Sequence record: MW373745.1
Direction: 5' to 3' (one strand)
DNA length: 64,000 nucleotides
A model generated the notes under the pieces. It ran no database searches and was not told where the DNA came from. It saw nothing but the letters and a program-made list of their open reading frames with translations. Each line of letters opens with the position of its first letter. The stretch's first letter is position 1. The position numbers were made by a program, and so were the translations under genes. Positions 5,701 through 64,000 of this stretch are shown one piece after another.

Positions 5701-8700
5701 ATGGACAGCACAGATAATTCTAAAGTTACAAGTATTGAAACAAATCAATATATAAAAAATCCAAAATATACTACAAAGGAAGCTATTGATAAATTTGTTC
5801 ACCTATTGATCCTGGGTAGATACACTGAAAAAGATTTATCAGATGCTTTGAACTATTGCTTAATACGTAGTACAGAAAGTTTTGACAGCATAGATTCTAT
5901 AAAAAAAGCTATAGAAGAACTTAAGAAAGATTCAGAAGCTTTTAAAATATTCATAGATAATACAAATAAACTTTTAGATGCTATCCAAGATATTAATAAA
6001 GAACAAACTGCTGAAATTGATAAAATTAATGAATTCTTAAAAACAGCAGTAACTTTAGATACTGAACAGACTATTGTAGGAACTAAAACATTTAATAAGA
6101 TTTATGTTCCAAATCCTACAGAATCTAAACAAGCTGCTAACGCTCAGTATGTTATAGATTATGTTAAAGATCAATTAAGTAAAACTATTGGAGATTTAAA
6201 TAATTTAAAAACTGAATCTAAAGATTTAATTATTAATGCTATTAACGAAGTTCTTGACAATTTAAATGCTTATAAAGAAACTATAAATGAAACTGCTATT
6301 AATCAAATGATTGATACTAAGTTAAATCCATTAATAGAAAGAATCACGACAATTGAATCTACTGCGGATTACACCAAAGAATTAGCAGAAGCTAATAAGC
6401 AAGCTATTGAAGATTTAAATACAAAAGTAGTTGATAATACTAGTGATATAACGGATATCAATAGAAGACTTGAAGAAGCTGTTTTCTATAGTAAAATTGA
6501 TGATACTCGCAAAACTATACAACTTAAAAATTATGATAGCATTTCCGGTGTTAGTACTACTGGTGAAGGTATCAATATTGCTATGGTTTCTAAATGGGAT
6601 AAAGTAGATTTAGGATCTACCCAAATTCCTATTAACTTAAATGGGTCAGAAACCAGACCAACTTATAACGATTCTAAAGAAATAGCTTTAATGGATGATG
6701 TTAAGTTGAAAGCAGATGCTAGCAATGTTTATAATAAATCTGAAATTGATACTAAATTAGATACTAAAGCAGATTCAAATACAGTTTATAATAAAGAAGA
6801 TTCTGACGCTAGATTTGTTAGTTTAACTGAGAATCAAAACATTCAAGGCAATAAAGTTATAGAAGGTATTTGGGAATTTAATGGAATATTGTCTAAACCA
6901 AAACAATTAGCAACTACCGAATATGTGGTAAATTATGCTAAAACATATGCTAACCAAAAAGTCGGAGATTTGGCAAGTCTTAAAACAGAAGCTAAAGATA
7001 CAGCAGTGTCTGCTATCAACGAATTATTTGATAAGATTGAATCTGGTAATACAGATGAGCCAGTTGATACTTATACAAAACAAGAAATAGATGCTAAATT
7101 AGAAACTAAAGCAGATGTTGACAATGTTTATAATAAATCTGAAATTGATTCAAAACTTGATCTTAAAGCAGACGCTGGCAGTGTCTATAACAAATCAGAG
7201 ATTGATCATAAATTTGAAAACATAACTATTGATGATATTAATTATGCGAAGTTAGGTGAGGAAAATACTTTTATTCAAGAACAAAACATAAAACAAGTAA
7301 ATATAAGTGATGAACCTACACTAGATACCCATGTAATTACTTTAAAATATTTTAAAGATAATTCTAGTGGTGGTATTTCTCCAGCTGATTATGTAACCAA
7401 GACTGAATTTACAAGTGGTATTAATAACAAAGCTGATAAAAATCATACACACGTTGTAGCTGATATAACAGATTTAAATTTAGATAGACTTGCTACAAAA
7501 GAAGAAACATATACTAAACAAGAAATAGATAATAAAATAGATGCAATAGTACCACCTGAAATTGACTTAACTCATTATGCAAAGAAAGATGCAGCTAATA
7601 TTTTTACAAAAGCTAATACTTTTACAGAAGCACCTTCGGTAGAAGTAGATGCAACACTAGATAATCACGTTATTAGAAAAAAACAATTTGACAATAGCAT
7701 AAAAGAAATAAATGATAAAGTTAAATCTGTTGTTGGTGATTTAAATTCATTAAATAATGAAGTTTCTAAAGATAATTTAGTTAATGCTATAAATAGTGTG
7801 GATGATAAGTTCAAAACAACGGCTAAAACTAATGAATCAAATACATTTACAGGGGATCAAACTTATTTAGACAATATTTTACTAGAATCTGTTCCTTCTG
7901 AAAGAAATCACGCAGTTAATTTGGGATATATTTTAGACAATCCTGGAGGTATAAAACTCCCTGATCATACAGCACTTACACAGAATTCTGTTACAGAAAT
8001 AACTTTTGGATATGCAAATCCAGTATCATATTCTGCACAAACATTAAAAAATGTATTCTTAAAAGACATTATAGGTAATGATTATAAAGCTATTATGGCA
8101 GATAATAAGTCTTTTACAGTAAGCCCTTCAGAAGAAACAGTTGTAATATTATCTAGAGTAGATTATTTAAACAATATAGATTTTAAGTTTGATATTACTA
8201 AAACTTCAGAGCAACTTAAAGAGTATGAGCTTAAAGAAGGTGAAGTAAGAGTTATATTATCTTATGATACTGTTTCTGTTTATAGTAACGGTTACGGATA
8301 TGGAGCTATGTTTTCTAGAAACGCTAATAAAAAAGACGGAGATTTAATATATGATTATTATTTTGGAAGTCAAAATGATATAACAAATAATAGAAAAGTA
8401 TCTATAAAAATAGATAAACTTGGCATTAATACTCCGGATATTGTAAGTATATCTATGACCACAAATGGTTCAGAAAAACTTACAGTTAAAACTGATGAAC
8501 TAAATCCTATAGAAAACATTTATGATTCTGCAGATATGACTTATATTCATACTCCTGTAAGCAAAACTGTAGGAGATGTTCTGTATAGTAATATATCTCA
8601 AGCAATCAAATCAATACATTTATTAGAAAATAATATATGTTCTTTAAAGCCTGCAGATATGGAATTACAACTTGTAAGACTTAAAGAATTTAAACAAACA

Positions 8701-10971
8701 ATAAATAATATATTGCAATCTATGTTTGATGAGAGCCCTGTAACTCTAAAAAATGGAGATTACATAGATGTTTCATTTAGTGGTAGTGCAAGCTATGGAA
8801 CAGGATATTGTGGGTATGTTAATATAAAAGATACTATAAGAGATATTACATATAAAGCTTATAAAGTATCTTCAAATGCTTTTAATACAACTAGTGGAAC
8901 TAAAGTTATTGCAGTTCTCACTTCTGATAATAGTAAAACAAATGTAACTTATTCTGATAGTGTATCAACATTAGAATCTTATGAAGTAGCAGAAAATGAG
9001 ATATTATTAGAAATATCATTTTCAACTGCTAAGCAATATTCTGCTGAATACGGGTATGGAGCTATGTTAGAATATTGGGGTTCTGTATCTGATTTATGTT
9101 ATGATTATTATATGGGTTCAAACCTAGATATGAACTGTCCATTTAAAATAACACTACTAAAGATAGGAAGCTCTGTTAAAGCAGATACTATACAAATAGG
9201 AGCACCTTCGTATTGGGCTAGTTCGTTAGTAATACACTTAAGAAAAAATACAGGAAAAATTATAGACTTTCTAGTTTCAACTGGTAGAAAAGTAATAGGT
9301 AGAGACGGAACTGAGAGTGGTTCTGTATATGATATAGTAGATAAAGCTTTAAAACCTTTAAAAGTATTAACATCTGATGCTCATCAAGAAATAAATGGTG
9401 TAACTAGATTTAATAACAAAGCTTATTTAAACATAGATAGTAATAAAATTACAGATGATAAGCAGATTATAAATAAAGAATATCTTGATGGAAGTATAAA
9501 GACTACAACTAAAGATATCATAAATGAAACTCCTATAATACCTTTTACAAATATTGAAGGTAAGAATACTAAAAATATAAGACTTAAAATATATGCAAAA
9601 ACTGATAGCTCTAGTTACTCCACTGGAGATACAGTTGTAGTAAGTAATCTTAAAGTTAAGCTTAAAGGAGATACTGAGTTTCTTAAACCTGTTGGAGTTG
9701 AAGTTACTGACAGAAGTAATCAAAAAGTAGGATTAAACTTAACAGGAGATGACACTGTATATAAAGATGATATTGCTATTACAGAAACAAAACCTTCAGG
9801 ATTTAATATCTCAAGTATTGATTTATCTAGTGGTAGTAATGCTGTAGCTACAGTAAAAACAAATGGTGTATACGATTATAGTGGAGTATATGAGATTTGT
9901 AATCCTTTCAGAGAGTATAATAAAAAATATTGCGTATTTTTAAGTTCTGATGGATTAAAAAATCCTTACTATCAAGTAACTTTAGAAAGCTCTAAAGAAG
10001 TAGAAAATATACAATTACAATTATATGGAACAAGTGCTACCAATCCTTTATTATACTCTAAAGAATGTATAATAGAAATATACACTGATGATACACTTAT
10101 AAGGTCGTTTAATATAAAAAATAAAAACGATAATACAAATAAACCTATTAATATTAAACTAGATTTTAAAGATGGAGTTTCTTTAATTCCTATAGAAGAG
10201 GCTGTATATAATTTAAAAAATATTATAGATAATAACTCATCTATTTTATCTGGAAATGGAAAACCTTCATTTTCACTAAACCCTAATAAAATAGGCTCTC
10301 TATACTCTGATACAACAAATAAAGCTGTATATATGTGTATAGACAATACTTTTGGTGCTAATAAATGGGTGAATATAGTAACAGGTGATGAAATTAAACC
10401 AAACCTTAGAAAAATAGAAATCACTTGTAATGTAAACTTAAGAAGTGGATATTATGGCGGTTGTATGAGCGGTGTTAAAATAGGATTTGATAACGGGTAT
10501 GCTTCTACAAAACAAATAGTTAAAGGATTAAATAATGGTCAGATATTATGGTCATTAGACGGTTTAGGTAATCTAGCTAGTTATTCTGAAGTAGGTTCTT
10601 TATCTCCTAGTGGTAATGATATCAAAGGTGATGTTACTACTACTGGAATATATAACGACCCTTCATATCATTGTGTTACTAATATATTCAAAGAGTATCT
10701 TGGAAATGCTGACCAGTGTTCATTATGGTCTGACGCTAGCACTAAACAATTAAAAATAACATTAATATCTGAAAAAGTCCCTAATAAAATTACTTATGTA
10801 GGTAACGGACATTATGGTCAGACTTCTGTATCTGATGTAAAAGCTATATGGTATTATGTAAATGATGACGGTATGAAAGTAGAAGAGTCTGTAGATAATG
10901 AACTTGAAGTTAGTGTTAATAGTTCAGAAACAAACGATAGTTCTTATATATATGCGTTCAATATAAATTAG
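5701..10971 (+). CDS. Large tail fibre/receptor-binding-like structural protein (1756 aa)
   Basis: Repeated YNKSEID.KL..KAD and GDL..L......L..AIN motifs, two internal YGYGAM...YDYY.GS modules, C-terminal domain shared with 48660-49943. Confidence 0.65.
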   Translation: MDSTDNSKVTSIETNQYIKNPKYTTKEAIDKFVHLLILGRYTEKDLSDALNYCLIRSTESFDSIDSIKKAIEELKKDSEAFKIFIDNTNKLLDAIQDINKEQTAEIDKINEFLKTAVTLDTEQTIVGTKTFNKIYVPNPTESKQAANAQYVIDYVKDQLSKTIGDLNNLKTESKDLIINAINEVLDNLNAYKETINETAINQMIDTKLNPLIERITTIESTADYTKELAEANKQAIEDLNTKVVDNTSDITDINRRLEEAVFYSKIDDTRKTIQLKNYDSISGVSTTGEGINIAMVSKWDKVDLGSTQIPINLNGSETRPTYNDSKEIALMDDVKLKADASNVYNKSEIDTKLDTKADSNTVYNKEDSDARFVSLTENQNIQGNKVIEGIWEFNGILSKPKQLATTEYVVNYAKTYANQKVGDLASLKTEAKDTAVSAINELFDKIESGNTDEPVDTYTKQEIDAKLETKADVDNVYNKSEIDSKLDLKADAGSVYNKSEIDHKFENITIDDINYAKLGEENTFIQEQNIKQVNISDEPTLDTHVITLKYFKDNSSGGISPADYVTKTEFTSGINNKADKNHTHVVADITDLNLDRLATKEETYTKQEIDNKIDAIVPPEIDLTHYAKKDAANIFTKANTFTEAPSVEVDATLDNHVIRKKQFDNSIKEINDKVKSVVGDLNSLNNEVSKDNLVNAINSVDDKFKTTAKTNESNTFTGDQTYLDNILLESVPSERNHAVNLGYILDNPGGIKLPDHTALTQNSVTEITFGYANPVSYSAQTLKNVFLKDIIGNDYKAIMADNKSFTVSPSEETVVILSRVDYLNNIDFKFDITKTSEQLKEYELKEGEVRVILSYDTVSVYSNGYGYGAMFSRNANKKDGDLIYDYYFGSQNDITNNRKVSIKIDKLGINTPDIVSISMTTNGSEKLTVKTDELNPIENIYDSADMTYIHTPVSKTVGDVLYSNISQAIKSIHLLENNICSLKPADMELQLVRLKEFKQTINNILQSMFDESPVTLKNGDYIDVSFSGSASYGTGYCGYVNIKDTIRDITYKAYKVSSNAFNTTSGTKVIAVLTSDNSKTNVTYSDSVSTLESYEVAENEILLEISFSTAKQYSAEYGYGAMLEYWGSVSDLCYDYYMGSNLDMNCPFKITLLKIGSSVKADTIQIGAPSYWASSLVIHLRKNTGKIIDFLVSTGRKVIGRDGTESGSVYDIVDKALKPLKVLTSDAHQEINGVTRFNNKAYLNIDSNKITDDKQIINKEYLDGSIKTTTKDIINETPIIPFTNIEGKNTKNIRLKIYAKTDSSSYSTGDTVVVSNLKVKLKGDTEFLKPVGVEVTDRSNQKVGLNLTGDDTVYKDDIAITETKPSGFNISSIDLSSGSNAVATVKTNGVYDYSGVYEICNPFREYNKKYCVFLSSDGLKNPYYQVTLESSKEVENIQLQLYGTSATNPLLYSKECIIEIYTDDTLIRSFNIKNKNDNTNKPINIKLDFKDGVSLIPIEEAVYNLKNIIDNNSSILSGNGKPSFSLNPNKIGSLYSDTTNKAVYMCIDNTFGANKWVNIVTGDEIKPNLRKIEITCNVNLRSGYYGGCMSGVKIGFDNGYASTKQIVKGLNNGQILWSLDGLGNLASYSEVGSLSPSGNDIKGDVTTTGIYNDPSYHCVTNIFKEYLGNADQCSLWSDASTKQLKITLISEKVPNKITYVGNGHYGQTSVSDVKAIWYYVNDDGMKVEESVDNELEVSVNSSETNDSSYIYAFNIN

Positions 10972-11153
10972 ATATGTAAGGCTGTATTAATGATAGTGCC
11001 AACTAAAGACTTTTTAAAAGATATTATTTGGAAACATCATTATTATTTTTTGATTCATTTTATTAAAGAAAACAGAGATATTTATATTGTCTTTATAATT
11101 ATAAATAAAGTTCGATAAATATAATTGTAATTTTATATTTATAGGATTGTACA

Positions 11154-11246
11154 ATGATAGAACCAAAAAGAGAGCCTACACAAGAATTTTTTGTATGTTT
11201 ATTAAAAGAACCTAGATGGGCTAGTATTGAAGCCGAGGATTCTTAA
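11154..11246 (+). CDS. 30-aa ORF MIEPKREPTQEFFVCLLKEPRWASIEAEDS (not in the ORF track)
   Basis: SD AGGA; its stop overlaps the start of the gp15-like gene (TAATG). Confidence 0.45.
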   Translation: MIEPKREPTQEFFVCLLKEPRWASIEAEDS

Positions 11247-22840: not shown

Positions 22841-25800
22841 TTGAGTATAATAAAATCAACTGCTAGGGGTATTAGAGGTACTTATAGAGCAGGCAAAAAT
22901 GCAGTTAATAGTGTTAATTCTGCTTATAATAGTGCTGTTAGTGGTATAAACAAAGTAAATTCTGCTTTAGATCCTATGAATACAGTTAGAAGTGCTACTC
23001 AAAGACTCAATAACTGGATGGATTCGGATTCTAAAGTATCTAAGACAACTCAAAAAAATAATGATTCAATTGTTAGTGAATTAAACAACGTAGCCAATGA
23101 AGTTGTTAGTGCAGCCAAAGCTTTAGATCCTATGAATGCTAGAAAATTAACAGAAATTTCAGAATCTCTTAAAAATATTTCAAAACAAATCTCGGATATT
23201 AAAAAAGGATTAATAGATAATCAAGATACAGAAATAAGACACCAAGGTTTTGATAAAAACGTTCAAAATGTTTCAGAATCTAAAGTAAATGTACCTCAGA
23301 ATAAAAGTTTTTTTGATAAACTTTTAGGTTGGTTAGGAGGTTTATTAGGTATATCGGCAGGTGCTTTATTACCATTATTGGGATCATTAGGAAGTTTTTT
23401 AACAAAGCCTTTAGATTTCATTTTAGATCTATTAAAAGGTGGTATTAATAAATTATGGACTTTATTTGAGCCATTATTAGGCCCTATTATAGACCCTTTA
23501 AAAAATGGATTTGAATTCTTAAAAAATAAATGGAACTCATTAGTAGATTTTATTAATAAAAAAATTAATATTGGTGATAAATGGAAAATCTCAGATAATG
23601 ATAATCCAAAAAATCCAAAATCACCAAAAGTAAGTTCATCTAATCCAGCTAAAGAACAATCTTGGATGTCTAAGAAATGGGATTCTTTTAAAGGTGCTAT
23701 GCAAAATGGATATGATTGGGCTTCACAAAAAGTAGATGATTTAAAATCATATGCTAGTAAGAAATATCAAGATATTAAAAATTCTAAAGTAGGTAAAATT
23801 ATATCTGCAGGATATGATAAATTAAAAGCAGCACAAAAATATATTGTAGAAAAAGCTATTGAAGGATTTGATGCTGTTAAAAATATGGTAAGCTCTGCTT
23901 GGGATTCAGCAGTTAAAGCAGCACAAAAAGGCTTTAATATGCTTAAAAAGTTTGCTTTAGCTCCTATGGAGAAATTTGTTAGTTCAGTAGGTAAGAAACT
24001 ATTTGGAAGTTCTAAGTTATTTTCAGTTCTACCTAGTATACTTGGAAATCTTGAAAAAATAGGAGCAAGATTAGCTGCTAGTGGTGCTAAAATAGCTTCA
24101 AAAGCTTTACCAGGTGTTGGGTTTGCTGTAGGTATATACCAAGCTTGGGATTTCTTTACTCGTGGTAGATGGGTATTGGGTTCAATAGCAGCACTTAGTG
24201 CTTGTATTTCATTATTACCAGGTATTGGTGGGATCATATCTATGTGTTTAGACTTAGGTTTATTTGCTACTGATATTATAACAAGTCCAGATGATGTAGA
24301 TAATCTTAATAAAGAACAAAATGATTTAGTAAATACAGCAAATAAAATGGTTCAAAATAATGATACTGGAGGTATTTTAGAACCAAGTCAAGTAGAAAAA
24401 GATAAAGCACAATCTGGAGTTCAAGATTCAAGTTCTAATTCAAGTTCAAGTAATAAAGGATTAAATGCTAAAGTACTTGATGGTAAATCTGCTAACGATT
24501 TTGCTGCTTCGTATACACCACATAAAGTGGATTCTAACGGAACCGTTATAGCTGCTAAAACAGGTTCTATATATAAAGGTTTGACCTGGGTAGAATCTGA
24601 AAAATATGATGCTGAAAAGCAAGCTTATTTTAAGAAACGTGAAGAAAAAGAAGCACAATTAGATGCGCTTTTTGAACAAGGTCAAAAAGCTATGAATTCT
24701 GGAGATACTGAAACCTTTAATAAATTAGTTACACAAAGAAATAAATTATCTGATGAATTATCTAAAATGAGCTTAGATTCTATCGATTCTAAATATCAAG
24801 CTATTGGACAAGCAAGAATTAAAAAATTGCAAAGCCAAGGAGCTAATGCAGATTTATCGGTATTTAGAACTAATGGAGATTCAAGTACTAGTTCAGGGGG
24901 AACTGATACAAAACCAGATTCTACAAATGCTAGTGCTAGTGTAGCTTCGCAAGCTTCTGGTTCAATCTCTCCGGCGCAAGTTCAAGGAGCTCAATCCACA
25001 GAAGCCCAAGGCTCGAGTTCAGGAGGATCTCCAGGAGCAAGAGCTGCAGCAGAATTCAGTAAAAAATATAACTTAGGAACTAGAGCAACAGGCGCTTGCG
25101 CCAAGTATGTTAGATCTTATTTGATGGCAGCAGGATATCCATTATCTGGTTGGCCAGTAGCAGCTGCAGATTATATAAATTTCTTACCTAAATATGGTTT
25201 TACACCAGTTCAAGGTAGAGCTTCACAAATAAGCCCAGAAGTAGGTGACATTTCAATAACCCAGAGATTTGGAAATCACAAATATGGGCATATTGCTATT
25301 TGGAATGGTTCTAATTGGGTTTCAGATTTTAAACAAAACTCAGTTTCAATTTATAGAGACGTAAATGCTTTCGGTGGGCCGGATGCTAATATAACTATTC
25401 TAAGAGATACTTCAGGTCAAAATCCATCTCAAGAACTTGTAAATCAACAATTATCCAATATGAATAGTTCTTTTAAAGTTGCATTAGGGGGTGGAGGTGC
25501 TAAAGGTGCTGTTTATAGTTTGGATTCTGGAGTTTCAAATGTTGTTACAAATACAGCAGGCGCTGCAGCTAGTGTTATAAGTTCTGGTGTAAGTAGTATC
25601 CAATCTTTTGCTAATGCTAATTCTATTACAACCAGAAAATCTTTAACTCAAATGTATACAGAATCTGGATTAAGTACTAGTTTTGGGTCAAGTTCAGCCC
25701 CACAAGCTGCTAGCCCAGCTGCAAATTCAACACCAAAAGAAACAAAAGCAGATATTAAGCCAGCTTCAAAACCAGTAGCGTCAGTCCCACAAGCTGCTAG

Positions 25801-26404
25801 CCCAGCTGCAAATTCAACACCAAAAGAAACAAAAGCAGATATTAAGCCAGCTTCAAAACCAGTAGCGTCAGCTCCAAAAGCAGTTCCTAAAGCTGCTAGC
25901 TATGGTACACCACACAGAGGTCAATATGATGCAGAAACAATGGAAGACTTCAACAACTTAGGAGATAACTTTAGTAAATCCAAATCACCAATTTCTTTAC
26001 CTGGAGATTCGAAATCTAACGTTCAAACTAACAATGCTGGCTCAGTAGTACCAGTAACTCCTGTAGTTAATATAAAGAATAATTCATCTCCAAGTGATTA
26101 TTCTTGGGCTTCTAAAAACAGTTTTAAAATTGCTAGAATGTTTGGGTTAGATGGCATCAGCGATTACGAAATACTTAATGAAGGTTCAGAATCTGACTTT
26201 TTACAATCTTATGGTATGTCTAAAAGACAAGCAATTCAATCAGCAGGGTTAAACAATACAGTACAAACCAAAGTTGCTAGTAATGTTAAAACAAAAGATG
26301 TGATACCAGCTGTCAATAAAACCCAAATAAATAATACCAATATACAGACTAAAACAAAAGAAACTTCTAATAAAGATTTGACTGATTCTTTTGTTTTGAG
26401 CTAA
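22841..26404 (+). CDS. Tape-measure/baseplate-hub-like protein with a CHAP/NlpC-type peptidoglycan hydrolase domain
   Basis: Long helical Ala/Ser-rich protein; GACAKYVR...GD...YGHIAIWNG..WVSDF (Cys/His dyad); lies upstream of the gp48/gp53-like genes. Confidence 0.65.
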   Translation: MSIIKSTARGIRGTYRAGKNAVNSVNSAYNSAVSGINKVNSALDPMNTVRSATQRLNNWMDSDSKVSKTTQKNNDSIVSELNNVANEVVSAAKALDPMNARKLTEISESLKNISKQISDIKKGLIDNQDTEIRHQGFDKNVQNVSESKVNVPQNKSFFDKLLGWLGGLLGISAGALLPLLGSLGSFLTKPLDFILDLLKGGINKLWTLFEPLLGPIIDPLKNGFEFLKNKWNSLVDFINKKINIGDKWKISDNDNPKNPKSPKVSSSNPAKEQSWMSKKWDSFKGAMQNGYDWASQKVDDLKSYASKKYQDIKNSKVGKIISAGYDKLKAAQKYIVEKAIEGFDAVKNMVSSAWDSAVKAAQKGFNMLKKFALAPMEKFVSSVGKKLFGSSKLFSVLPSILGNLEKIGARLAASGAKIASKALPGVGFAVGIYQAWDFFTRGRWVLGSIAALSACISLLPGIGGIISMCLDLGLFATDIITSPDDVDNLNKEQNDLVNTANKMVQNNDTGGILEPSQVEKDKAQSGVQDSSSNSSSSNKGLNAKVLDGKSANDFAASYTPHKVDSNGTVIAAKTGSIYKGLTWVESEKYDAEKQAYFKKREEKEAQLDALFEQGQKAMNSGDTETFNKLVTQRNKLSDELSKMSLDSIDSKYQAIGQARIKKLQSQGANADLSVFRTNGDSSTSSGGTDTKPDSTNASASVASQASGSISPAQVQGAQSTEAQGSSSGGSPGARAAAEFSKKYNLGTRATGACAKYVRSYLMAAGYPLSGWPVAAADYINFLPKYGFTPVQGRASQISPEVGDISITQRFGNHKYGHIAIWNGSNWVSDFKQNSVSIYRDVNAFGGPDANITILRDTSGQNPSQELVNQQLSNMNSSFKVALGGGGAKGAVYSLDSGVSNVVTNTAGAAASVISSGVSSIQSFANANSITTRKSLTQMYTESGLSTSFGSSSAPQAASPAANSTPKETKADIKPASKPVASVPQAASPAANSTPKETKADIKPASKPVASAPKAVPKAASYGTPHRGQYDAETMEDFNNLGDNFSKSKSPISLPGDSKSNVQTNNAGSVVPVTPVVNIKNNSSPSDYSWASKNSFKIARMFGLDGISDYEILNEGSESDFLQSYGMSKRQAIQSAGLNNTVQTKVASNVKTKDVIPAVNKTQINNTNIQTKTKETSNKDLTDSFVLS
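25699..25871 (+). repeat. 87-bp tandem duplication (PQAASPAANSTPKETKADIKPASKPVAS x2)
   Basis: Units start at 25699 and 25786. Confidence 0.95.
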
Positions 26405-27372: not shown

Positions 27373-27864
27373 ATGTATATTAGTAAGCAACTTACAAATT
27401 ATTTAGATAATTATTCGTTCAGTGAAGCTAATAAAACTGAAGCAGAAGTTTGTAATGTTAGAGATTACAGGTCTATGGATTATAGCACTATAACAAAATA
27501 TATTAATGATTCTAATACTATTAATGTTAAAATAAATGCAAATGATTTCATTGAAAGTGTTTCTAATAGATTGTATAATGATCCTAATTTATGGGATTTA
27601 TTAATGCTTATTAATAATAAAGATGCCTTGAGTGATATGCCTTATGATAATGATAGAATAGCAGATATGGCTGACGAATTGATAGCCAATTATTTTAATA
27701 ATCCTGAGAAACCATACCAAGGTAATGTTACTGAACAATTAATAACCGAATACAGGGAATATTTGATAGATTTATTGACACAAAAGAATTATCAAAATAT
27801 GATTATAAAAGCTTTAGACCCTGCTTATTTGGGTGACTTCTTAAGACTTTTTAAGTACAAATAA
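27373..27864 (+). CDS. Baseplate wedge protein (T4 gp53-like)
   Basis: ESVSNRLYNDPNLWDLLMLIN LysM-like motif. Confidence 0.7.
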   Translation: MYISKQLTNYLDNYSFSEANKTEAEVCNVRDYRSMDYSTITKYINDSNTINVKINANDFIESVSNRLYNDPNLWDLLMLINNKDALSDMPYDNDRIADMADELIANYFNNPEKPYQGNVTEQLITEYREYLIDLLTQKNYQNMIIKALDPAYLGDFLRLFKYK

Positions 27865-27870
27865 TTTAAT

Positions 27871-28119
27871 AAGCCAAGCATTTTTTATACTTTTTAATAT
27901 TAGTTTAAGCTTTGCTTTAAGTTTTAAGCATATGCTGGGATATAATACTATAGTATATACTACTAAAAACCTTAGCATTTTTTATACTTTTTAATATTGC
28001 TTTAAGTTTTAAGCATATACTAGGATATAATACTATAGTATATACTATTAAAAAGCCAAGCATTTTTTATACTTTTTAATATTGCTTTAAGTTTTAGACT
28101 TATACTATAGTATATACCT
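27871..28119. repeat. Intergenic tandem repeats (units of 97 and 85 bp plus a partial third) running into the gap
   Basis: agcattttttatactttttaatatt at 27877, 27974 and 28059; each unit has the palindrome atactatagtat. Confidence 0.9.
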
Positions 28120-28219
28120 NNNNNNNNNNNNNNNNNNNNNNNNNNNNNNNNNNNNNNNNNNNNNNNNNNNNNNNNNNNNNNNNNNNNNNNNNNNNNNNNN
28201 NNNNNNNNNNNNNNNNNNN
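28120..28219. other. Scaffold gap of exactly 100 N
   Basis: Run of N; unrelated phage types on either side. Confidence 0.98.
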
Positions 28220-47280: not shown

Positions 47281-47916
47281 ATGTTTTATGATTTAAAAAA
47301 TAAAAGTTTAAAATATGATGATATTTTTTTAAAAGATGTAAAAATACAAAACGAAGAAGGTGAAATTGATGCACAAGATACTTATTTTTTAAGTGCTTGC
47401 GATGATAAGCTTTTAAAAGAGCTTGGTTTTGCTAAAGTTAAAGAAGAAGAAATTCCAAGTTTTAATGAAAAAATTGAAGAACTTCGCCAAATTCAAACTT
47501 ATGATGAAGAAAATAATCTTTATATTATTTCTTATGAGATTAAAGAAAAAGCATTAGAAGAGTTAAAAGAATTAAAATTAGAAGAACTAAAAGCTATAAA
47601 AGAAGAAAAGCTTTTGTTTATGCCTTTTAAAAATACTATATTTCAAATTGACACGGAAGCAAAAATTAATATTAGCGGAAAAGTTAGCGAGATAATGTTA
47701 GCAAATCTCAATAATACTCCTTTGGAAAATATTGCTTGGATTGATAAAGATAATAAAATCATTACATTTAACAAAGAAGAATTTTTAGAATTTGGGGTTG
47801 GTATCGCTAAATATACTGAAAGTATTATTTTTAAAAATGATGAACTAAGAAATAAAGTGAAAAATGCCACATCTTTAGAAGAATTAAATTTAATTGCATG
47901 GGAGAGTGAAAAATGA
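47281..47916 (+). CDS. Tail fibre assembly-type protein (DUF4376-like)
   Basis: FQID.E...I.W...DN.......EF...C-terminal ATSLEELN.I.W. Confidence 0.65.
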   Translation: MFYDLKNKSLKYDDIFLKDVKIQNEEGEIDAQDTYFLSACDDKLLKELGFAKVKEEEIPSFNEKIEELRQIQTYDEENNLYIISYEIKEKALEELKELKLEELKAIKEEKLLFMPFKNTIFQIDTEAKINISGKVSEIMLANLNNTPLENIAWIDKDNKIITFNKEEFLEFGVGIAKYTESIIFKNDELRNKVKNATSLEELNLIAWESEK

Positions 47917-48296
47917 GTACTGAAAATATAATAAAAGAAGGTGCTATACTCGGTTCTTTAAGTGGATCTGCATTATTAGGATTGATGGTTTTTGTCTTAG
48001 CTGGGATTGCATGGCATTTATATAAAACTTTACATAAAGAAGCTGGGGAAAGAACAAAAGAACTTATAAGTGAAACCAAAAATACTAATGTTCTTATTAG
48101 AGAACAAATTGCAGTATCCAGAGCAAGTAGCGATAGTTTGGTTAAATTTATAGAAACACATTGCTCAAAAACCAATGACAAGCTAGAAGCTATAGAAACA
48201 GATCTTATGAGAATGGATGAAAGGCTTGTTAAGCTTACTCAAATAAGAAATGATGAATTAAGAAGTATTTTTAAAAAAAAGGAAAACAATGACTAA
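47913..48296 (+). CDS. Holin-like membrane protein
   Basis: One N-terminal TM segment plus a coiled coil, in the lysis region. Confidence 0.45.
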   Translation: MSTENIIKEGAILGSLSGSALLGLMVFVLAGIAWHLYKTLHKEAGERTKELISETKNTNVLIREQIAVSRASSDSLVKFIETHCSKTNDKLEAIETDLMRMDERLVKLTQIRNDELRSIFKKKENND

Positions 48297-48663
48297 AACA
48301 GAATTAAAAAGGGTTTGTGTAAAGCCATACGATAAGGACAGGTTTGAAGTGATACAAGATTATGAGTTTATTTTGCCAAATTACAAAGGCATTGTACCAC
48401 AAGGTTTTAAAACTGATGGAGCGAGTATTCCACGCCTTTTTTGGTCTTTGTTTCCACCTTTTAAAAGTGAGTATTTTAGTGCTTGTGTAGTGCATGATTT
48501 TTTATGTGAAAAAGCAAAATCAAGAAAAGATTACAAACTTGCTGATCTTGTTTTAAAAGAAGCAATGCAAGCTTTAGAAATAAATAAATTTAAGATTTTT
48601 GTTTTTTATTGCTCTTGTAATTTATTTCATCAGATCAAATGTTTAATAAAGGGGATAAGATGA
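48289..48663 (+). CDS. DUF1353-family protein
   Basis: VPQGFKTDGASIPR..W...ACVVHDFL. Confidence 0.8.
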   Translation: MTKTELKRVCVKPYDKDRFEVIQDYEFILPNYKGIVPQGFKTDGASIPRLFWSLFPPFKSEYFSACVVHDFLCEKAKSRKDYKLADLVLKEAMQALEINKFKIFVFYCSCNLFHQIKCLIKGIR

Positions 48664-49943
48664 GCGTGGATTTAAGAGAAATTGCCATAAAAACAGAAGA
48701 AATCAATAAAGATTTTAGTGAAGCTTTAGAAATTTTAAAAGAACTTTTTAAAAATGGAGTAAAACCAAGCGATGAAAGTATTAAAAATGCTATAAATGAA
48801 GTTTTAACAAGTTTTAACTTTATAAAACAAAGTGAATTAAAAGAAAAACTAGAAGCCTTGCTAGAAGAGCTTGGCATCAATGCAAATATCAATGAAGAGA
48901 GTTTAAAAGAAGTTGTATTAAAAGTTGTTTTAGAAAATCAAGAAAGTTTAAAAGGTGATAAAGGAGATCCTTTTACTTATGAAGATTTTACAGAAGAACA
49001 GCTTAAAAATTTAAAAGGGCAAGATGGAGCTAAAGGAGCTGATGGTAAAAGTGCTTATGAACTTTGGCTTGAAAATGAAGAAAACACGGGAAAAAGTCAA
49101 GATGAATTTTTAGAAAGTTTAAAGGCTCAAACACCAACAAAAGAAGAAATTAAACCTATTATAGAAGAGATGCTCGAAGATATGAAATTAAATTTAGGCA
49201 TTAATGGAATAAAAGTATCTAATTCTATTCCCACTCCAAAAACAAAAGCTAATGTTAATGATTTAATTATAACTTATAATGAAAATGTAAAACAACTTTG
49301 GCTTTGTGTGGCAAGTGATGATAAATACACAAGTTGGATTAATTTGCTTGGAAATGAAAATATTACAGCACAAGAGTTGATTATTATTAGTTTTGATACA
49401 AATTTAAATAGTGGTCAATATGGCGGATGTTTAAGTGATTTGCGTTTTGGTTTTGAAAATTCTTTAGCAAGCACTACGCAAATTATAAAAGGACTTAATG
49501 AAGGCAGTTTTTTAATCACTAAAGATGGAATGGGTTTAAAATCTAAAAATTATACTGAAGTTAGCGTTCTTTCAAAACCAAGTAAAAATCAAATAGAAGG
49601 AAATATCAAAACGAGCGGAATTTATAATGATCCTGCTTGGCATAATATTACCAATGCTTTAAAAAAATATGATGGCAATGCAAATGAATGCTGTCTTTGG
49701 GCTTCTAATATAAAAAATAGTGTAAGTATAGAGCTTTTTACAAATGAAATTCCTATGAGTCTTTTTTATAGGCAAGCTGGATATTATGGAAATGTCAATC
49801 TTTCAAATATAAAAATGCAAAAAGCCCTTAGAGTTCAAAATGAAATTATAGTCGAGAGAAGCTTTATAGGAATAAAAAAAGAAATTGATAAAACTACCTA
49901 TGGTGATAATGCTTTTTTATTTGAATTTGAAGAAGAAAAATGA
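48660..49943 (+). CDS. Collagen-like repeat tail/receptor-binding protein
   Basis: KGDKGDPFTYEDFT..Q...LKGQDGAKGADGKSAYE; C-terminal domain homologous to 10320-10971. Confidence 0.65.
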   Translation: MSVDLREIAIKTEEINKDFSEALEILKELFKNGVKPSDESIKNAINEVLTSFNFIKQSELKEKLEALLEELGINANINEESLKEVVLKVVLENQESLKGDKGDPFTYEDFTEEQLKNLKGQDGAKGADGKSAYELWLENEENTGKSQDEFLESLKAQTPTKEEIKPIIEEMLEDMKLNLGINGIKVSNSIPTPKTKANVNDLIITYNENVKQLWLCVASDDKYTSWINLLGNENITAQELIIISFDTNLNSGQYGGCLSDLRFGFENSLASTTQIIKGLNEGSFLITKDGMGLKSKNYTEVSVLSKPSKNQIEGNIKTSGIYNDPAWHNITNALKKYDGNANECCLWASNIKNSVSIELFTNEIPMSLFYRQAGYYGNVNLSNIKMQKALRVQNEIIVERSFIGIKKEIDKTTYGDNAFLFEFEEEK

Positions 49944-49991: not shown

Positions 49992-50453
49992 ATGAAAATA
50001 ACAATTAATAGAAGATACACAGGAAAAACTTGCGTTATTGGTAAATTTAAGGTTTTAGATGATGATGATAAAATTCTTTTTGAATGTTTTTCTTTGGAAG
50101 AAGACAAAGAAGGTTTAGAAAGTGGCAAAGATTTAAGAATACCTGAAGGAAATTATAATTTAAAAAGACATAGTCCTTCACGATTTGAAAATACTTTAAG
50201 AAGTATTACAAAAAAAGATGATGATACAATGATAAATGTTTATAATGATGATGTGCCATCAAGTCGTGCAATTTTAATACACTGGGGAAACACTGATAAA
50301 GACACACAAGGTTGTATCTTGCTTGGGCTTACCAAGGATAATAATAATGAAAGTGTCGGTCAAAGCAGGCAGGCTTGCAAAGAATTTTACGACTTAATGC
50401 ATGGTAAAAATCTTGAAGACATTAAATTAGAAATAACAAATGAATTAGCATGA
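49992..50453 (+). CDS. DUF5675-family protein, candidate endolysin
   Basis: IPEGNY...RAILIHWGN..KDTQGCILLG; lies between holin-like and spanin-like genes. Confidence 0.7.
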   Translation: MKITINRRYTGKTCVIGKFKVLDDDDKILFECFSLEEDKEGLESGKDLRIPEGNYNLKRHSPSRFENTLRSITKKDDDTMINVYNDDVPSSRAILIHWGNTDKDTQGCILLGLTKDNNNESVGQSRQACKEFYDLMHGKNLEDIKLEITNELA

Positions 50454-50681: not shown

Positions 50682-51101
50682 ATGATAAATCTTTTATTTG
50701 GAAATGCAAAGCTTTATATAGCCTTAGCTTTAATGGCAATCTTAACAGGGTATTTTTATCTAAGACTTGATAGCACTCAAGCAAAATTAGAAAAAAGTCA
50801 AAGTGATTTAGCTTTGGCTTTAAAAATAAATGAAAATAATCAAGAAAAATTAAAAGAATTAAATCAAATTCATAAAACAGAATTAAAGGCTTTAAATGAA
50901 GCAAACAATCAAAAAAATCAAGTACAAGAAAGGGTGCAATATGTTAAAGAATACATTTATAAAAGCAATGAAAATAATATTACCAAGCTTTTTAACGATG
51001 TCGTTGATAGGTTGTGGGATGCAAACTCAACAAGTAGTAACCAAAATAGAAATTCAAAAAGTAAAAATTCCGCAAGAACTACTAACATTAAGTCCTCTTG
51101 A
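50682..51101 (+). CDS. Inner-membrane spanin (Rz-like)
   Basis: N-terminal TM segment and coiled coil, downstream of the lysin candidate. Confidence 0.6.
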   Translation: MINLLFGNAKLYIALALMAILTGYFYLRLDSTQAKLEKSQSDLALALKINENNQEKLKELNQIHKTELKALNEANNQKNQVQERVQYVKEYIYKSNENNITKLFNDVVDRLWDANSTSSNQNRNSKSKNSARTTNIKSS

Positions 51102-61565: not shown

Positions 61566-62737
61566 AAATCCCCTGCAAGTTTTTCGATATAATCTCCCCA
61601 CCACTGCATTAACTTTCTTTTTAATTCTATATTTTCACTACGATTATAAGCTTTTAAAATGGCGTTTTTTTGCTCGTGTGCTAAACACTGCTCGGCTATA
61701 TCCATACTCACACCATGATCTAATTGATGTTCGTTGGCTAAACTTCTAAACATAGCACGAAAGCCATGTGCACTTTGAATACCTTTATATCCTAGTCGTT
61801 TATTGATATTACAGGTGATATTCTCGCTATTACACCCATTTTTTGAACTTCCAGCAAATATATAATCATTGACTTTCATTTTCTTTTGTTCTTTTAAAAT
61901 TTTAAGCGCTTGAGAATTTAAAGTGATAATATGTTCTTTTCTCATTTTCATTTTTTCAGCTTTAATAGTCCATATAGCATTTTTTAAATCAATTTCATCC
62001 CAAGTTGCTTTTATAACATTACCGGGGCGTTGTGCAGTCAAAAGATTAAAAAGCATTAGATTTTTATGTGTTTTTTTAAGATCTGAATTTTTTAAGGCTA
62101 ATATATATTCTTTAATTTTATCGTTTTCTAGTAGAGTTGGCTGATGAATTACTTTTGAAGCTTTTTTAAAAACTATGGAATTATCAATACTTGTCACAGG
62201 GTTATTTTCTACGATTTCAAGTTGCAAAGCATATTTAAAGATTTTGTTAATCCAGCCTTTAGCTTTTATAAGTGTAGGGATTTGATGCTCTATGGTTTTA
62301 AGTGTTTCGATGACATGTGAACGCTTGATGCTTTCTATATCTACATCTTTGAAATTCTTAAAAACGCCATTTTTGTATTTTAATCCTCTTTGTATTTCTT
62401 TTAGACTTAATCCATCAGCCTTACATTTTTCTAAAACTTCATCATATATATCGCCAAATTTAAGTCTTTTAGCGTTTTTTATGTTTTGTCCTTTTGCTTT
62501 TAGCTTAAAAGCATTTAAAGCGATTTCTCTAAGCTCTGCTAAGGAAAGTAACGGATACTCTCCTATTTTTATATAAGTATCATTTGCTTGTCTTATTTTA
62601 AATAATTTTTTACCACTAGGATAAATAAAAACATATAAGCCTTTTAAACTCGGATCAGCAAATTTTATAAATTTTTTATCACTTTCGCATTTAATGCTTT
62701 TTAAAAAACTATCGGTAAGTTTGTTAATTTTTGCCAT
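61562..62737 (-). CDS. int: Tyrosine integrase (P4-like, with arm-binding domain)
   Basis: QRPGN (R), KMK, SAHGFR (HxxR), LAH, AYNR. Confidence 0.95.
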   Translation of the reverse strand: MAKINKLTDSFLKSIKCESDKKFIKFADPSLKGLYVFIYPSGKKLFKIRQANDTYIKIGEYPLLSLAELREIALNAFKLKAKGQNIKNAKRLKFGDIYDEVLEKCKADGLSLKEIQRGLKYKNGVFKNFKDVDIESIKRSHVIETLKTIEHQIPTLIKAKGWINKIFKYALQLEIVENNPVTSIDNSIVFKKASKVIHQPTLLENDKIKEYILALKNSDLKKTHKNLMLFNLLTAQRPGNVIKATWDEIDLKNAIWTIKAEKMKMRKEHIITLNSQALKILKEQKKMKVNDYIFAGSSKNGCNSENITCNINKRLGYKGIQSAHGFRAMFRSLANEHQLDHGVSMDIAEQCLAHEQKNAILKAYNRSENIELKRKLMQWWGDYIEKLAGDF

Positions 62738-62778
62738 TAATTTTTCTCTCTTTTTTAGTGTCTATTTTGGTGTAAAAA

Positions 62779-63035
62779 GTAGCCCATTTTGTAACCCATT
62801 TTTGGAAAAGTGACCCACTTTTTTAAGAACATTATAGCACATTTTGGAATATAAAAGAACGATATAGAACAAGCTTTAAAACATTTTATTATAGGCATTT
62901 GATTAATATATTAAAGCAAAATAGGGATTTGATAAAAAAGAGTAATGGTGGATTTAGCAGAATATTAAAAAAAGTATCTAAATACCTATAAAATAGATAT
63001 TTTATATTTTATAGTAACCCATTAAATAACCCAGT
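62779..63035. other. attP-like region: tRNA-3'-end core with flanking arm-type repeats
   Basis: Core tggtggatttagcag at 62946-62960 (minus strand CTGCTAAATCCACCA); (g/a)t(a/g)(a/g)ccca repeats at 62779, 62791, 62810, 63014 and 63026. Confidence 0.65.
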
Positions 63036-63057
63036 TTTCTAATATGATTTTTTAATA

Positions 63058-63142
63058 TTAAAATCCGATTAAAATGCCTATAAACATATTTCTTAAAATC
63101 CGATTAAAAATGATATGTGCTTTTATTAAAATCCGATTAAAA
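63058..63142 (+). repeat. Three identical 17-bp direct repeats ttaaaatccgattaaaa
   Basis: At 63058, 63093 and 63126. Confidence 0.9.
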
Positions 63143-63365
63143 ACAATACGATAATCTTTGCCAGTGCTTTTTAATATAATAGTGTTTGTATAAAAATATA
63201 AAAAATGGTTTTTGTTTTTTTGCTTTCTTAGTAAAGAGCAATAAGTATTCCATAATTGCTAATTTAATCTTTGATTAATAGTTTTATTATTTTTTATATA
63301 TTATAATTTTTAAATAAAAATATCATTCCTTAAAGCTTCGTTTGTTAATTACTTAAAGACTTCTT

Positions 63366-63993: not shown

Positions 63994-64000
63994 TCTCTAT

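What the first reader, a model, noticed from the sequence alone, without database searches (positions are those of the whole stretch)
10320..10971. C-terminal domain shared between the lytic myovirus fibre and a temperate siphovirus protein (49290-49943)
Seen, colinear over about 210 aa at the C-termini of both proteins: NLRSGYYGGCMSGVKIGFDNGYASTKQIVKGLNNG vs NLNSGQYGGCLSDLRFGFENSLASTTQIIKGLNEG; TTGIYNDPSYHCVTN vs TSGIYNDPAWHNITN; GNADQCSLW vs GNANECCLW. The N-terminal parts are unrelated. Inference: a receptor-binding module exchanged between unrelated Campylobacter phage lineages, implying a shared surface receptor and prophages acting as a host-range reservoir.
Basis: partly seen in the sequence, partly recalled or inferred. 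Interest (0 to 1): 0.7.

Follow-up and report, generated by a model that had tools for sequence, protein, structure and literature searches.

The report
FlaGrab glycan-binding head, also in prophages
The shared C-terminal domain is real, but it is the already studied sugar-binding head of the Campylobacter phage protein FlaGrab (Gp047); its likeness to prophage proteins was recorded in 2011, and the two copies here are old relatives on two separate contigs, not a recent swap.

Summary
Observation confirmed. ORF A (5701-10971, 1756 aa) and ORF B (48639-49943, 434 aa) share a colinear C-terminal domain (40% identity over 176 aa, E 8e-41; about 250 aa by profile).

The window is the end of GenBank MW373745.1, "Campylobacter phage CJLB-13". 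A run of 100 N at 28120-28219 joins a Firehammervirus contig to a CJIE4 prophage contig, so the two genes belong to two genomes.

A is the orthologue of NCTC12673 Gp047/FlaGrab. The C-terminal quarter of Gp047 was shown experimentally to bind acetamidino-pseudaminic acid on flagellin. That GenBank record already notes C-terminal similarity to the prophage protein CJE0595.

The head is 82-98% identical across both lytic genera, whatever their receptor. It is only 26-41% identical to any prophage copy, so nothing indicates a recent lytic-temperate exchange or a shared receptor.

New here:
- A three-tier mosaic of A.
- Evidence that the 3' part of flagrab moved between the two lytic genera.
- A conserved DUF1353 gene directly upstream of every prophage copy checked (8 of 8).
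- A confident all-beta model with no relative in the PDB.

Verdict: mostly already known; modest interest.

The parts
5701..10971 (+). ORF A, 1756 aa, intact: the Firehammervirus orthologue of NCTC12673 Gp047/FlaGrab (annotated 'tail fiber protein' in relatives)
   Evidence: 71% identity over 1330 aa to Gp047, 80% or more from A 669 onward. phrog_16233 'tail fiber protein'. 100% match to MW373745.1. Single reading frame; two A-runs of 7 or more.
5701..7062 (+). N-terminal module of A (aa 1-454), specific to Firehammervirus
   Evidence: tblastn finds it in 15 records, all Firehammervirus-type, and in no Fletchervirus or prophage. 89% identical to the CPt10 N-terminus.
7063..7704 (+). Fibre-shaft-like repeat region of A (aa 455-668)
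   Evidence: Pfam PTR 'phage tail repeat like' at aa 572-609, below the curated cut-off. Weak match of aa 455-515 to the T5 L-shaped tail fibre 8hqz, E 4e-4. Internal repeats 333-376 and 464-509.
7963..9228 (+). Two paralogous globular domains inside A (aa 755-919 and 1010-1176)
   Evidence: 27% identity over 173 aa, E 6.5e-14, between segments of A.
9988..10968 (+). Equivalent in A (aa about 1430-1756) of CC-Gp047, the experimentally defined binding quarter of Gp047 (residues 1040-1365)
   Evidence: Residue offset taken from the alignment. Construct boundaries from PMC3715477.
10189..10968 (+). Shared head domain, copy in A (aa 1497-1756; BLASTP core 1541-1714 = nt 10321-10842)
   Evidence: 82-96% identical in all Eucampyvirinae.
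28120..28219 (.). Run of 100 N: scaffold gap between the Firehammervirus contig (left) and the CJIE4 prophage contig (right)
   Evidence: The left flank matches Firehammervirus repeat regions. The right flank is 99.9-100% identical to CJIE4-3/-4.
47281..47916 (+). CJIE4 gene with a C-terminal DUF4376 domain (Tfa-like fibre-assembly chaperone domain)
   Evidence: Pfam PF14301, E 2e-13. 41% identical to cje0230.
48289..48663 (+). DUF1353 gene directly upstream of B and overlapping its start
   Evidence: Pfam PF07087, E 5e-19; phrog_1158 'tail assembly chaperone'. 86% aa and 84% nt identity to CJIE1 cje0229. Present directly upstream of the head-bearing gene in 8 of 8 chromosomal loci.
48639..49943 (+). 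ORF B, 434 aa: CJIE4 protein of the CJE1447/CJE0595 type. Alpha-helical N-terminus, short collagen-like G-X-Y stretches (aa about 104-139), then the head domain
   Evidence: phrog_5132, plus collagen-like matches to tail-fibre PHROGs at aa 103-172. Translation. 99.8% identical in CJIE4-1 to -5. Annotated 'hypothetical protein'.
49176..49940 (+). Shared head domain, copy in B (aa 180-434; BLASTP core 218-392 = nt 49290-49814)
   Evidence: AlphaFold2 model: pLDDT 87.7, pTM 0.80, all-beta.
49992..50453 (+). DUF5675 gene downstream of B, followed by an Rz-like spanin gene (50682-51101). B is thus the last gene of the tail module before these two genes.
   Evidence: Pfam PF18925, E 1e-29. phrog_214/2466 spanin.

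Best explanation
The two regions are diverged homologues of one domain: the C-terminal beta-rich head of the FlaGrab (Gp047) family.

ORF A is the FlaGrab orthologue of the Firehammervirus in this record. It is a three-tier mosaic:
- an N-terminal 454 aa found only in Firehammerviruses;
- about 1090 aa shared at high identity with Fletchervirus Gp047;
- a last stretch of about 250 aa that is also present in prophages.

ORF B is the CJE1447/CJE0595-type protein of the CJIE4 prophage. There the same head sits on a short helical and collagen-like stalk. The gene lies at the end of the tail module, directly after a conserved DUF1353 gene.

Mechanism:
- Shown for the NCTC12673 orthologue, whose last 260 aa are 83% identical to A's: the C-terminal quarter containing this head binds acetamidino-modified pseudaminic acid on flagellin and agglutinates cells.
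- Inferred for A: the same ligand.
- Inferred for B and the other prophage copies: the head is the distal binding knob of an accessory tail fibre. It recognises a Campylobacter surface glycan that need not be the same one.

The lytic and temperate copies descend from an old common module and were not recently exchanged. The two genes are in one window only because two contigs (a lytic phage, and the prophage of what is most likely the propagation host) were scaffolded into one record.
For: Identity of A:
- 71% identity over 1330 aa to Gp047.
- The GenBank note on gene 48 of NCTC12673 records 'similarity at C-terminus to CJE0595'.

Function of the head region, from papers:
- Binding maps to residues 1040-1365. 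Both halves, cut at 1204, are inactive (PMC3715477). By the alignment that cut falls inside the shared domain.
- The ligand is Pse5Ac7Am on flagellin, and the homologues tested bind the same sugar (PMC4690887; PMC7099621).

Homology of the A and B heads:
- E 8e-41.
- The profile search of 1.84 billion representatives finds full-length domain matches only in proteins of Campylobacter, its phages and unnamed metagenome or Logan contigs.
- The GTDB scan hits Campylobacter only.
- Foldseek against BFVD returns only Campylobacter-phage FlaGrab homologues, E 1e-17 to 1e-24.

Old divergence: the lytic clade is 82-98% identical internally and 26-41% identical to prophage copies.

Fibre context of B:
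- DUF4376 and DUF1353 genes upstream; DUF5675 and a spanin gene downstream.
- Collagen-like stretches.
- DUF1353 directly upstream in 8 of 8 prophage loci.
- A CJE1447-like protein was detected by iTRAQ in lysogens (PMC3995785).

Two contigs: the 100-N gap and the flank identities.
Against: - No ligand has been determined for A itself or for any prophage copy.
- The binding construct CC-Gp047 carries about 70 residues upstream of the shared domain, so 'binding head = shared domain' is an inference.
- Gp047 was reported absent from NCTC12673 virions. The lytic protein may therefore not be a fibre at all, which weakens the analogy used for B.
- The fold could not be classed as a lectin. The PDB search gave nothing meaningful (best E 0.01, TM 0.16) and the F5/8-type-C matches in BFVD are faint (E 0.02-0.09).
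- No virion data exist for CJIE4-type phages in the searchable literature.
Confidence: 0.8

Rival explanations
1. One reading: a receptor-binding module recently exchanged between lytic and temperate phages, so that both use the same receptor and prophages act as a reservoir of host-range determinants for lytic phages.
For: The domain really is shared across unrelated lineages. The lytic version binds the cell surface (PMC3715477). A lytic-prophage RBP hybrid is documented for another protein, F341 RBP and the CJIE1 H-fibre (PMC10877375).
Against: The highest lytic-prophage identity is 41%, and the lytic copies are monophyletic. The head is 82-98% conserved in phages that use capsule or flagella, so it does not track host range. 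Gp047 binds 95% of C. jejuni and 90% of C. coli strains, far more than NCTC12673 infects, and was not found in virions. The H-fibre is unrelated to B.
Confidence: 0.12
2. The prophage proteins (B, CJE0595, CJE0228) are not virion fibres. They would be soluble FlaGrab-like lectins released at lysis or expressed from the lysogen, acting on the flagella of neighbouring cells (motility or growth modulation).
For: This is the model the FlaGrab authors favour for the lytic protein (PMC4690887). A CJE1447-like protein was detected in uninduced lysogens (PMC3995785). In CJIE1 the gene pair cje0229-cje0228 sits after the known fibre and chaperone pair (cje0231, cje0230), i.e. in addition to an established RBP.
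Against: B has a collagen-like, coiled stalk. Its position inside the tail module is fixed, with a DUF1353 partner that PHROGs labels as a tail assembly chaperone. The same paper also detected capsid protein, so general derepression explains the expression.
Confidence: 0.2
3. The shared domain is a structural or assembly element (a trimerisation knob or an intramolecular chaperone) and not the binding site. Binding would reside in the residues upstream within CC-Gp047.
For: CC-Gp047 includes about 70 residues upstream of the shared domain. Both half-constructs lost activity, which could reflect misfolding alone.
Against: The 3C half (1040-1204) contains all the upstream residues and still does not bind. 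The invariant columns are rich in Tyr, Trp, His, Asn, Asp and Lys. The domain is the only part conserved across all lineages.
Confidence: 0.06
4. Both genes belong to one natural genome: a Firehammervirus that has captured a CJIE4 element.
For: Both lie in a single GenBank record of 210,101 bp.
Against: The junction is 100 N. The CJIE4 part runs to the very end of the record and includes integrase and flank. The sister phages CJLB-12 and CJLB-14 are 158-160 kb. Removing about 36 kb leaves a normal Firehammervirus size.
Confidence: 0.02

Closest known systems
Gp047 / FlaGrab (formerly Gp48) of Campylobacter phage NCTC12673 (AEA86394.1)
   Same: A is its orthologue: 71% identity over 1330 aa and 83% in the last 260 aa. 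It has the same C-terminal quarter, which binds Pse5Ac7Am-flagellin, and it contains A-runs of 7 or more like the reported phase-variable tracts (PMC3715477, PMC8540345).
   Different: A is 391 aa longer and carries a Firehammervirus-only N-terminal 454 aa that Gp047 lacks. In this genome it sits next to the gp15-like and tail-tube genes, whereas Gp047 sits between RNaseH and replication genes. B shares only the head, at about 33% identity.
CJE0595 (CJIE2), CJE1447 (CJIE4) and CJE0228 (CJIE1) prophage proteins of C. jejuni RM1221
   Same: B is the CJE1447-type protein, 99.8% identical to the CJIE4-1 to -5 copies. The family shares the head domain and the upstream DUF1353 gene.
   Different: All are annotated as hypothetical and none has a studied function. 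CJE0228 is 41-43% identical to B and has a different N-terminus. PMC3995785 lists CJE1447 as a homologue of CJE0595 but does not link it to CJE0228 or to Gp047.
[quoted passage not shown]
   Different: A different, unrelated protein: cje0231 against B gives E 0.17. In CJIE1 the head-bearing gene of this finding (cje0228) lies two genes downstream of the H-fibre.
Lectin-like beta-sandwich heads of phage fibres (F5/8 type C / galactose-binding-like, ConA-like)
   Same: An all-beta C-terminal domain at the end of a fibrous protein that binds a sugar in the lytic lineage. One distant hit (P0037) places the same short repeat found at the N-terminal end of the shared region ahead of a ConA-like Laminin_G_3 domain.
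   Different: No Pfam family, no PDB sequence hit and no meaningful Foldseek hit in the PDB. The BFVD F5/8-type-C matches are only E 0.02-0.09 with TM about 0.3.

Membership tests
FlaGrab / Gp047 family (Eucampyvirinae) | Full-length orthology to NCTC12673 Gp047 | tested here: met
   A: 71% identity over 1330 aa, E 0. B: not met; only the last 250 aa or so are homologous, at about 33%.
FlaGrab / Gp047 family (Eucampyvirinae) | Intact C-terminal quarter equivalent to CC-Gp047 (residues 1040-1365) | tested here: met
   A residues about 1430-1756 are colinear and without stops. The last 260 aa are 83% identical to Gp047.
FlaGrab / Gp047 family (Eucampyvirinae) | Binds acetamidino-pseudaminic acid on flagellin | not testable with these tools
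   Shown for Gp047 and for the homologues tested (PMC4690887, PMC7099621). Inferred for A; unknown for B.
FlaGrab / Gp047 family (Eucampyvirinae) | Not a component of the virion | not testable with these tools
   Reported for NCTC12673 only (PMC4690887). No data for Firehammerviruses were found.
FlaGrab / Gp047 family (Eucampyvirinae) | Phase variation through homopolymer tracts | tested here: inconclusive
   Gene A has two A-runs of 7 or more and is in one frame. In three of the six lytic records inspected (F379, CP21, F341) the gene lies in two reading frames, one frameshift each. Variation within a population cannot be seen in one assembly.
Phage tail fibre / receptor-binding protein (for B) | Gene in the tail module beside fibre-assembly genes | tested here: met
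   DUF4376 and DUF1353 genes upstream; DUF5675 and a spanin gene downstream. In CJIE1 the gene lies between the fibre-chaperone gene and the next tail gene.
Phage tail fibre / receptor-binding protein (for B) | Fibrous shaft followed by a distal globular head | tested here: met
   Collagen-like G-X-Y stretches, with PHROG tail-fibre matches at aa 103-172. All-beta head model, pLDDT 87.7.
Phage tail fibre / receptor-binding protein (for B) | Present in particles; trimeric | not testable with these tools
   No virion data were found. Only a monomer could be modelled.
Phage tail fibre / receptor-binding protein (for A and B) | Head varies with host range among close relatives | tested here: not met
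   82-98% identical across both lytic genera irrespective of receptor type. 99.8% identical among CJIE4-1 to -5. Diversity exists only between prophage families (35-83%).
CJIE1 H-fibre / F341 hybrid RBP family | Sequence similarity to tail fibre protein H (cje0231) | tested here: not met
   BLASTP of cje0231 against B: best E 0.17.
Lectin-like jelly-roll folds (F5/8 type C, ConA-like) | Significant fold or profile match | tested here: inconclusive
   Pfam: none. PDB by Foldseek: best E 0.01, TM 0.16. BFVD F5/8-type-C proteins: E 0.02-0.09, probability 0.7-0.8, TM about 0.3.

The most novel reading that the evidence does not exclude
In Firehammerviruses the FlaGrab homologue may be a true tail fibre that grips glycosylated flagella. 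Most known flagellotropic Campylobacter phages belong to this genus, and their receptor-binding protein is still unidentified. The Firehammervirus protein carries a genus-specific 454-aa N-terminal module and fibre-shaft repeats, and it lies beside tail genes. The Fletchervirus protein, reported absent from virions, would then be an N-terminally different acquisition of the same 3' part. The prophage DUF1353-plus-head cassettes would be the compact fibre version of the same lectin. The head would thus be a lectin for flagellar glycans shared by all Campylobacter phage lineages.
Probability: 0.3. Interest if true: 0.6.

Novelty: already known. Interest (0 to 1): 0.3.

Why it matters
[quoted passage not shown] The FlaGrab papers that could be read never mention the prophage relatives. 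The prophage papers do not link CJE1447 or CJE0228 to Gp047.

Tying the two literatures together gives a family of diverged natural heads. Comparing them could show which residues make the sugar pocket.

The mosaic structure of the Firehammervirus protein also offers a concrete candidate for the unidentified flagellum-binding protein of that genus.

The finding also flags a public record (MW373745.1) that mixes a lytic phage with a host prophage. This matters to anyone using that record for taxonomy or for safety screening of therapeutic phages.

Tried and rejected
- Pfam on both proteins and on five family members, down to E 10: no family for the head.
- PDB by sequence profile: no hit at E up to 10.
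- Foldseek against the PDB: no meaningful hit.
- AlphaFold2 on A residues 669-1756 with a 4-row alignment, meant to see the whole domain train: failed (pLDDT 34) and not used.
- Identity of B with the published CJIE1 H-fibre: rejected.
- One natural genome carrying both genes: rejected because of the 100-N gap.
- A third copy of the domain in the window: none found.
- Self-BLAST of A as one sequence returned only the identity hit. Segment-wise comparison was needed.
- Kropinski et al. 2011, where the prophage similarity was probably first described, is not held in the library. The only direct evidence is the GenBank note.
- A DNA search of the 58.5-kb metagenomic contig L003 against known phages: no match.
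- Virion proteomes of CJIE4-like or CJIE1-like phages: none found.
- Solved structures for DUF1353 and DUF5675: none.
Both were retried only after the stated wait.
Full report
**What the window is.** Megablast shows that window 1-25000 is 100% identical to GenBank MW373745.1, "Campylobacter phage CJLB-13". This is an unannotated record of 210,101 bp, and window base 1 is record base 146,102. The left part is a Firehammervirus of the CP220/CPt10/CP21/F379 type.

Window 28220 to about 62320 is 99.9-100% identical to the prophages CJIE4-3 and CJIE4-4. The window ends exactly at the end of the record. Between the two parts lies a run of 100 N at 28120-28219.

The sister phages CJLB-12 and CJLB-14 are 158-160 kb. 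The record is therefore a scaffold of two replicons: a lytic phage, and a host prophage that was either induced or carried over as host DNA. The two genes of the finding are not in one genome.

**The observation.**
- ORF A is 5701-10971 (1756 aa) and ORF B is 48639-49943 (434 aa).
- BLASTP gives A 1541-1714 against B 218-392 with 40% identity, 63% positives and E 8e-41.
- A three-sequence profile covers A 1497-1756 and B about 180-434.
- The rest of the two proteins is unrelated.
- No third full copy exists in the window.

**What A is.** The orthologue in NCTC12673 is gene 48 (AEA86394.1, 1365 aa, "putative tail fibre"). Its GenBank note reads [quoted passage not shown]. A aligns to it at 71% identity over 1330 aa, and at 80% or more from A 669 onward. 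This protein is Gp047, later renamed FlaGrab.

From the papers:
- Binding maps to the C-terminal quarter, residues 1040-1365. The halves 1040-1204 and 1204-1365 are both inactive.
- The fragment agglutinates 95% of C. jejuni and 90% of C. coli strains, but not C. lari, C. fetus, C. upsaliensis, C. concisus or Helicobacter (PMC3715477).
- The ligand is acetamidino-modified pseudaminic acid on flagellin.
- Homologues occur in all sequenced Campylobacter lytic phages, and those tested bind the same sugar.
- The protein was not found in the NCTC12673 virion proteome, and anti-Gp047 antibody does not label particles.
- It inhibits growth (PMC4690887; PMC7099621).
- The gene is phase-variable through two poly-A tracts (PMC8540345).

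By the alignment, the binding quarter corresponds to A residues about 1430-1756. The inactivating cut falls inside the shared domain.

**Anatomy of A.** A is a three-tier mosaic.
- Residues 1-454 occur only in the 15 Firehammervirus-type records and in no Fletchervirus.
- Residues 455-668 carry fibre-shaft-like repeats: a sub-threshold Pfam PTR match and a weak match to the T5 L-shaped fibre.
- Residues 669-1756 are shared with Fletchervirus Gp047.

Within the shared part there are two paralogous domains, 755-919 and 1010-1176 (E 6.5e-14). There is also a weak partial relative of the head at 1368-1431, and then the head itself.

Orthologue length varies: 939 aa in CPt10, 1365 aa in NCTC12673 and 1756 aa here.

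**What B is.** B is annotated "hypothetical protein" in CJIE4. It corresponds to CJE1447 of RM1221, which is listed as a homologue of CJE0595 in CJIE2. A CJE1447-like protein was detected by iTRAQ in lysogens (PMC3995785).

B has a helical N-terminus and short collagen-like G-X-Y stretches that match tail-fibre PHROGs, followed by the head. The neighbouring genes, in order, are:
- a DUF4376 (Tfa-like) gene;
- a 127-aa ORF;
- a DUF1353 gene (phrog_1158, "tail assembly chaperone");
- B;
- a DUF5675 gene;
- an Rz-like spanin gene.

The CJIE4 genes scanned encode neck, tail terminator-like, chaperone and tape-measure proteins, and none matched a tail sheath. "Siphovirus" is therefore reasonable.

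In the Mu-like prophage CJIE1 the same head is in cje0228. That gene lies two genes downstream of the published H-fibre cje0231. The H-fibre itself is unrelated to B (E 0.17). The published prophage-to-lytic RBP story, F341 and the H-fibre (PMC10877375, PMC7882524), therefore concerns another protein.

**Distribution and fold.**
- A profile search of 1.84 billion representative proteins gives 23 hits at E up to 0.001.
- Among the hits whose source was looked up, full-length domain matches come only from Campylobacter species (jejuni, lari, volucris, subantarcticus), their phages, and unnamed metagenome or Logan contigs. A C. aviculae copy came from the first protein search.
- The looked-up hits from other bacteria match only the first 60 or so profile positions, a short repeat present in many copies in fibre-like proteins.
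- The GTDB scan found eight loci, all in Campylobacter.
- There is no Pfam family and no PDB sequence relative.
- An AlphaFold2 model of B residues 180-434 is confident (pLDDT 87.7, pTM 0.80) and all-beta.
- Foldseek finds nothing meaningful in the PDB.
- Among viral models it finds only the Campylobacter-phage FlaGrab homologues, E 1e-17 to 1e-24. Matches to F5/8-type-C domains are faint.
- The lectin-like character thus rests on the published binding data and not on a fold match.

**Was the module exchanged?** Over 261 aligned columns the six lytic heads are 82-98% identical to one another. They are 26-41% identical to every prophage or metagenomic copy. In a neighbour-joining tree they form a single tight clade. 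Nothing indicates a recent lytic-temperate transfer.

Two other exchanges are visible.

1. Between the two lytic genera.
   - The 3' 3.3 kb of flagrab (window 7701-11002) is 84% identical at the nucleotide level to NCTC12673 and F341.
   - It is the main stretch of the 28-kb Firehammervirus part that matches those Fletchervirus loci; the only others are two short stretches of about 300 bp and 100 bp.
   - By contrast, the SSB proteins are 38% identical.
   - The Firehammervirus tail-tube protein finds no Fletchervirus hit at all.
   - CPt10 has a Firehammervirus-type N-terminus (89% to A), but its C-terminal 489 aa are 96% identical to Gp047.

2. Between prophage types.
   - The DUF1353 gene is 84% (nt) and 86% (aa) identical between CJIE4 and CJIE1, while the genes on both sides are 41% identical.
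   - A DUF1353 gene lies directly upstream of the head-bearing gene in 8 of 8 chromosomal loci. Its identity to the window's DUF1353 protein ranges from 60% to 87%.
   - That range is higher than the head's identity in the same loci, 35% to 83%.
   - No DUF1353 gene was found in the fetched stretch of the metagenomic contig L003, and none was seen in the annotated genes flanking flagrab in the lytic loci.

**Verdict on the interpretation.** The head is a surface-binding module, and it is shared across unrelated phage lineages. However, the lytic carrier is the well-known FlaGrab. Its head does not vary with host range, and in the one phage examined it is not a virion protein. The divergence is old, and a shared receptor is not implied. 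The similarity to a prophage protein was already recorded in 2011.

The word "prophage" does not occur in the three FlaGrab papers that could be read. The prophage papers do not connect CJE1447 or CJE0228 with Gp047. The link is therefore known but unexploited.

**Most likely mechanism.**
- Shown for Gp047: the C-terminal quarter binds Pse5Ac7Am on flagellin.
- Inferred for A: the same ligand, given 83% identity.
- Inferred for B and its relatives: the head is the distal knob of an accessory fibre that needs or partners with the DUF1353 protein. The ligand is an unknown Campylobacter surface glycan.
- Open question: whether the Firehammervirus protein, with its extra N-terminal module and its place beside tail genes, is the missing flagellum-binding fibre of that genus. 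PMC10877375 states that no receptors or RBPs are known for these phages.

**Broken genes (counts only).** In three of the six lytic records inspected (F379, CP21, F341) the flagrab orthologue lies in two reading frames, one frameshift each. In CJLB-13, CPt10 and NCTC12673 it is in one frame.

**Scores.** Novelty is "already known", and interest is 0.3.

Noticed in passing
window 28120-28219 (and the whole record MW373745.1): A run of 100 N joins a Firehammervirus contig to a complete CJIE4-type prophage with its integrase-side flank. The prophage part runs to the last base of the record. The 'CJLB-13 genome' of 210 kb is thus a scaffold of two replicons.
   Followed up: yes
window 7701-11002, compared with L007/L008 (NCTC12673, F341) and L004 (CPt10): The 3' 3.3 kb of flagrab is an island of 84% nucleotide identity between Firehammervirus and Fletchervirus. 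SSB is 38% identical at the protein level, and the tail-tube protein finds no Fletchervirus match. The CPt10 C-terminal 489 aa are 96% identical to Gp047. This looks like gene-fragment transfer between the two lytic genera.
   Followed up: yes
window 11129-11230: A 102-bp stretch just downstream of A, ahead of the gp15-like gene, is 88-89% identical to the stretch that spans the start of gp047 in NCTC12673 and F341. The same sequence therefore lies after the gene in one genus and at its 5' end in the other. Its meaning is unexplained (a recombination footprint or a shared expression signal).
   Followed up: partly
window 48289-48663; L002 1905-2258; L009-L015: The DUF1353 gene is far better conserved (84% nt between CJIE4 and the Mu-like CJIE1) than the genes on either side of it (41% aa). 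It precedes the head-bearing gene in 8 of 8 prophage loci. It may be an obligate partner or a recombination anchor for a fibre cassette.
   Followed up: partly
L003 10001-13888 (Logan ERR4224383 contig, 58.5 kb): A 1295-aa protein carries a partial copy of the head in its middle (residues 727-897). It sits on a phage-like contig (PhoH, PD-(D/E)XK, actin-like ALP and holin genes; GC 26-31%) that has no DNA match to any of 50,697 phage records. This may be an undescribed phage of a low-GC host, possibly a Campylobacter relative.
   Followed up: partly
window 5701-10971 against orthologues: The length of the FlaGrab orthologue varies widely (939, 1365 and 1756 aa). The differences come from the Firehammervirus-only N-terminal module, which Gp047 lacks, and from middle domains that CPt10 lacks. 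A contains two paralogous domains (aa 755-919 and 1010-1176).
   Followed up: partly
window 27860-28119: AT-rich repeat units lie at the end of the Firehammervirus contig, matching the annotated 'repeat regions' of CP220, CPt10 and F379. The contig probably broke here because of them.
   Followed up: no
window 24001-26000 (inside ORF 22841-26404): GC rises to 36%, against 25-30% elsewhere. The ORF is annotated as a membrane protein or endolysin in relatives.
   Followed up: no
window 62320-64000: About 1.7 kb beyond the end of the CJIE4-3/-4 records is still matched by phage record PC10 (MZ047271.2). It could be host flank or a longer prophage end. No tRNA gene was found in the window.
   Followed up: no
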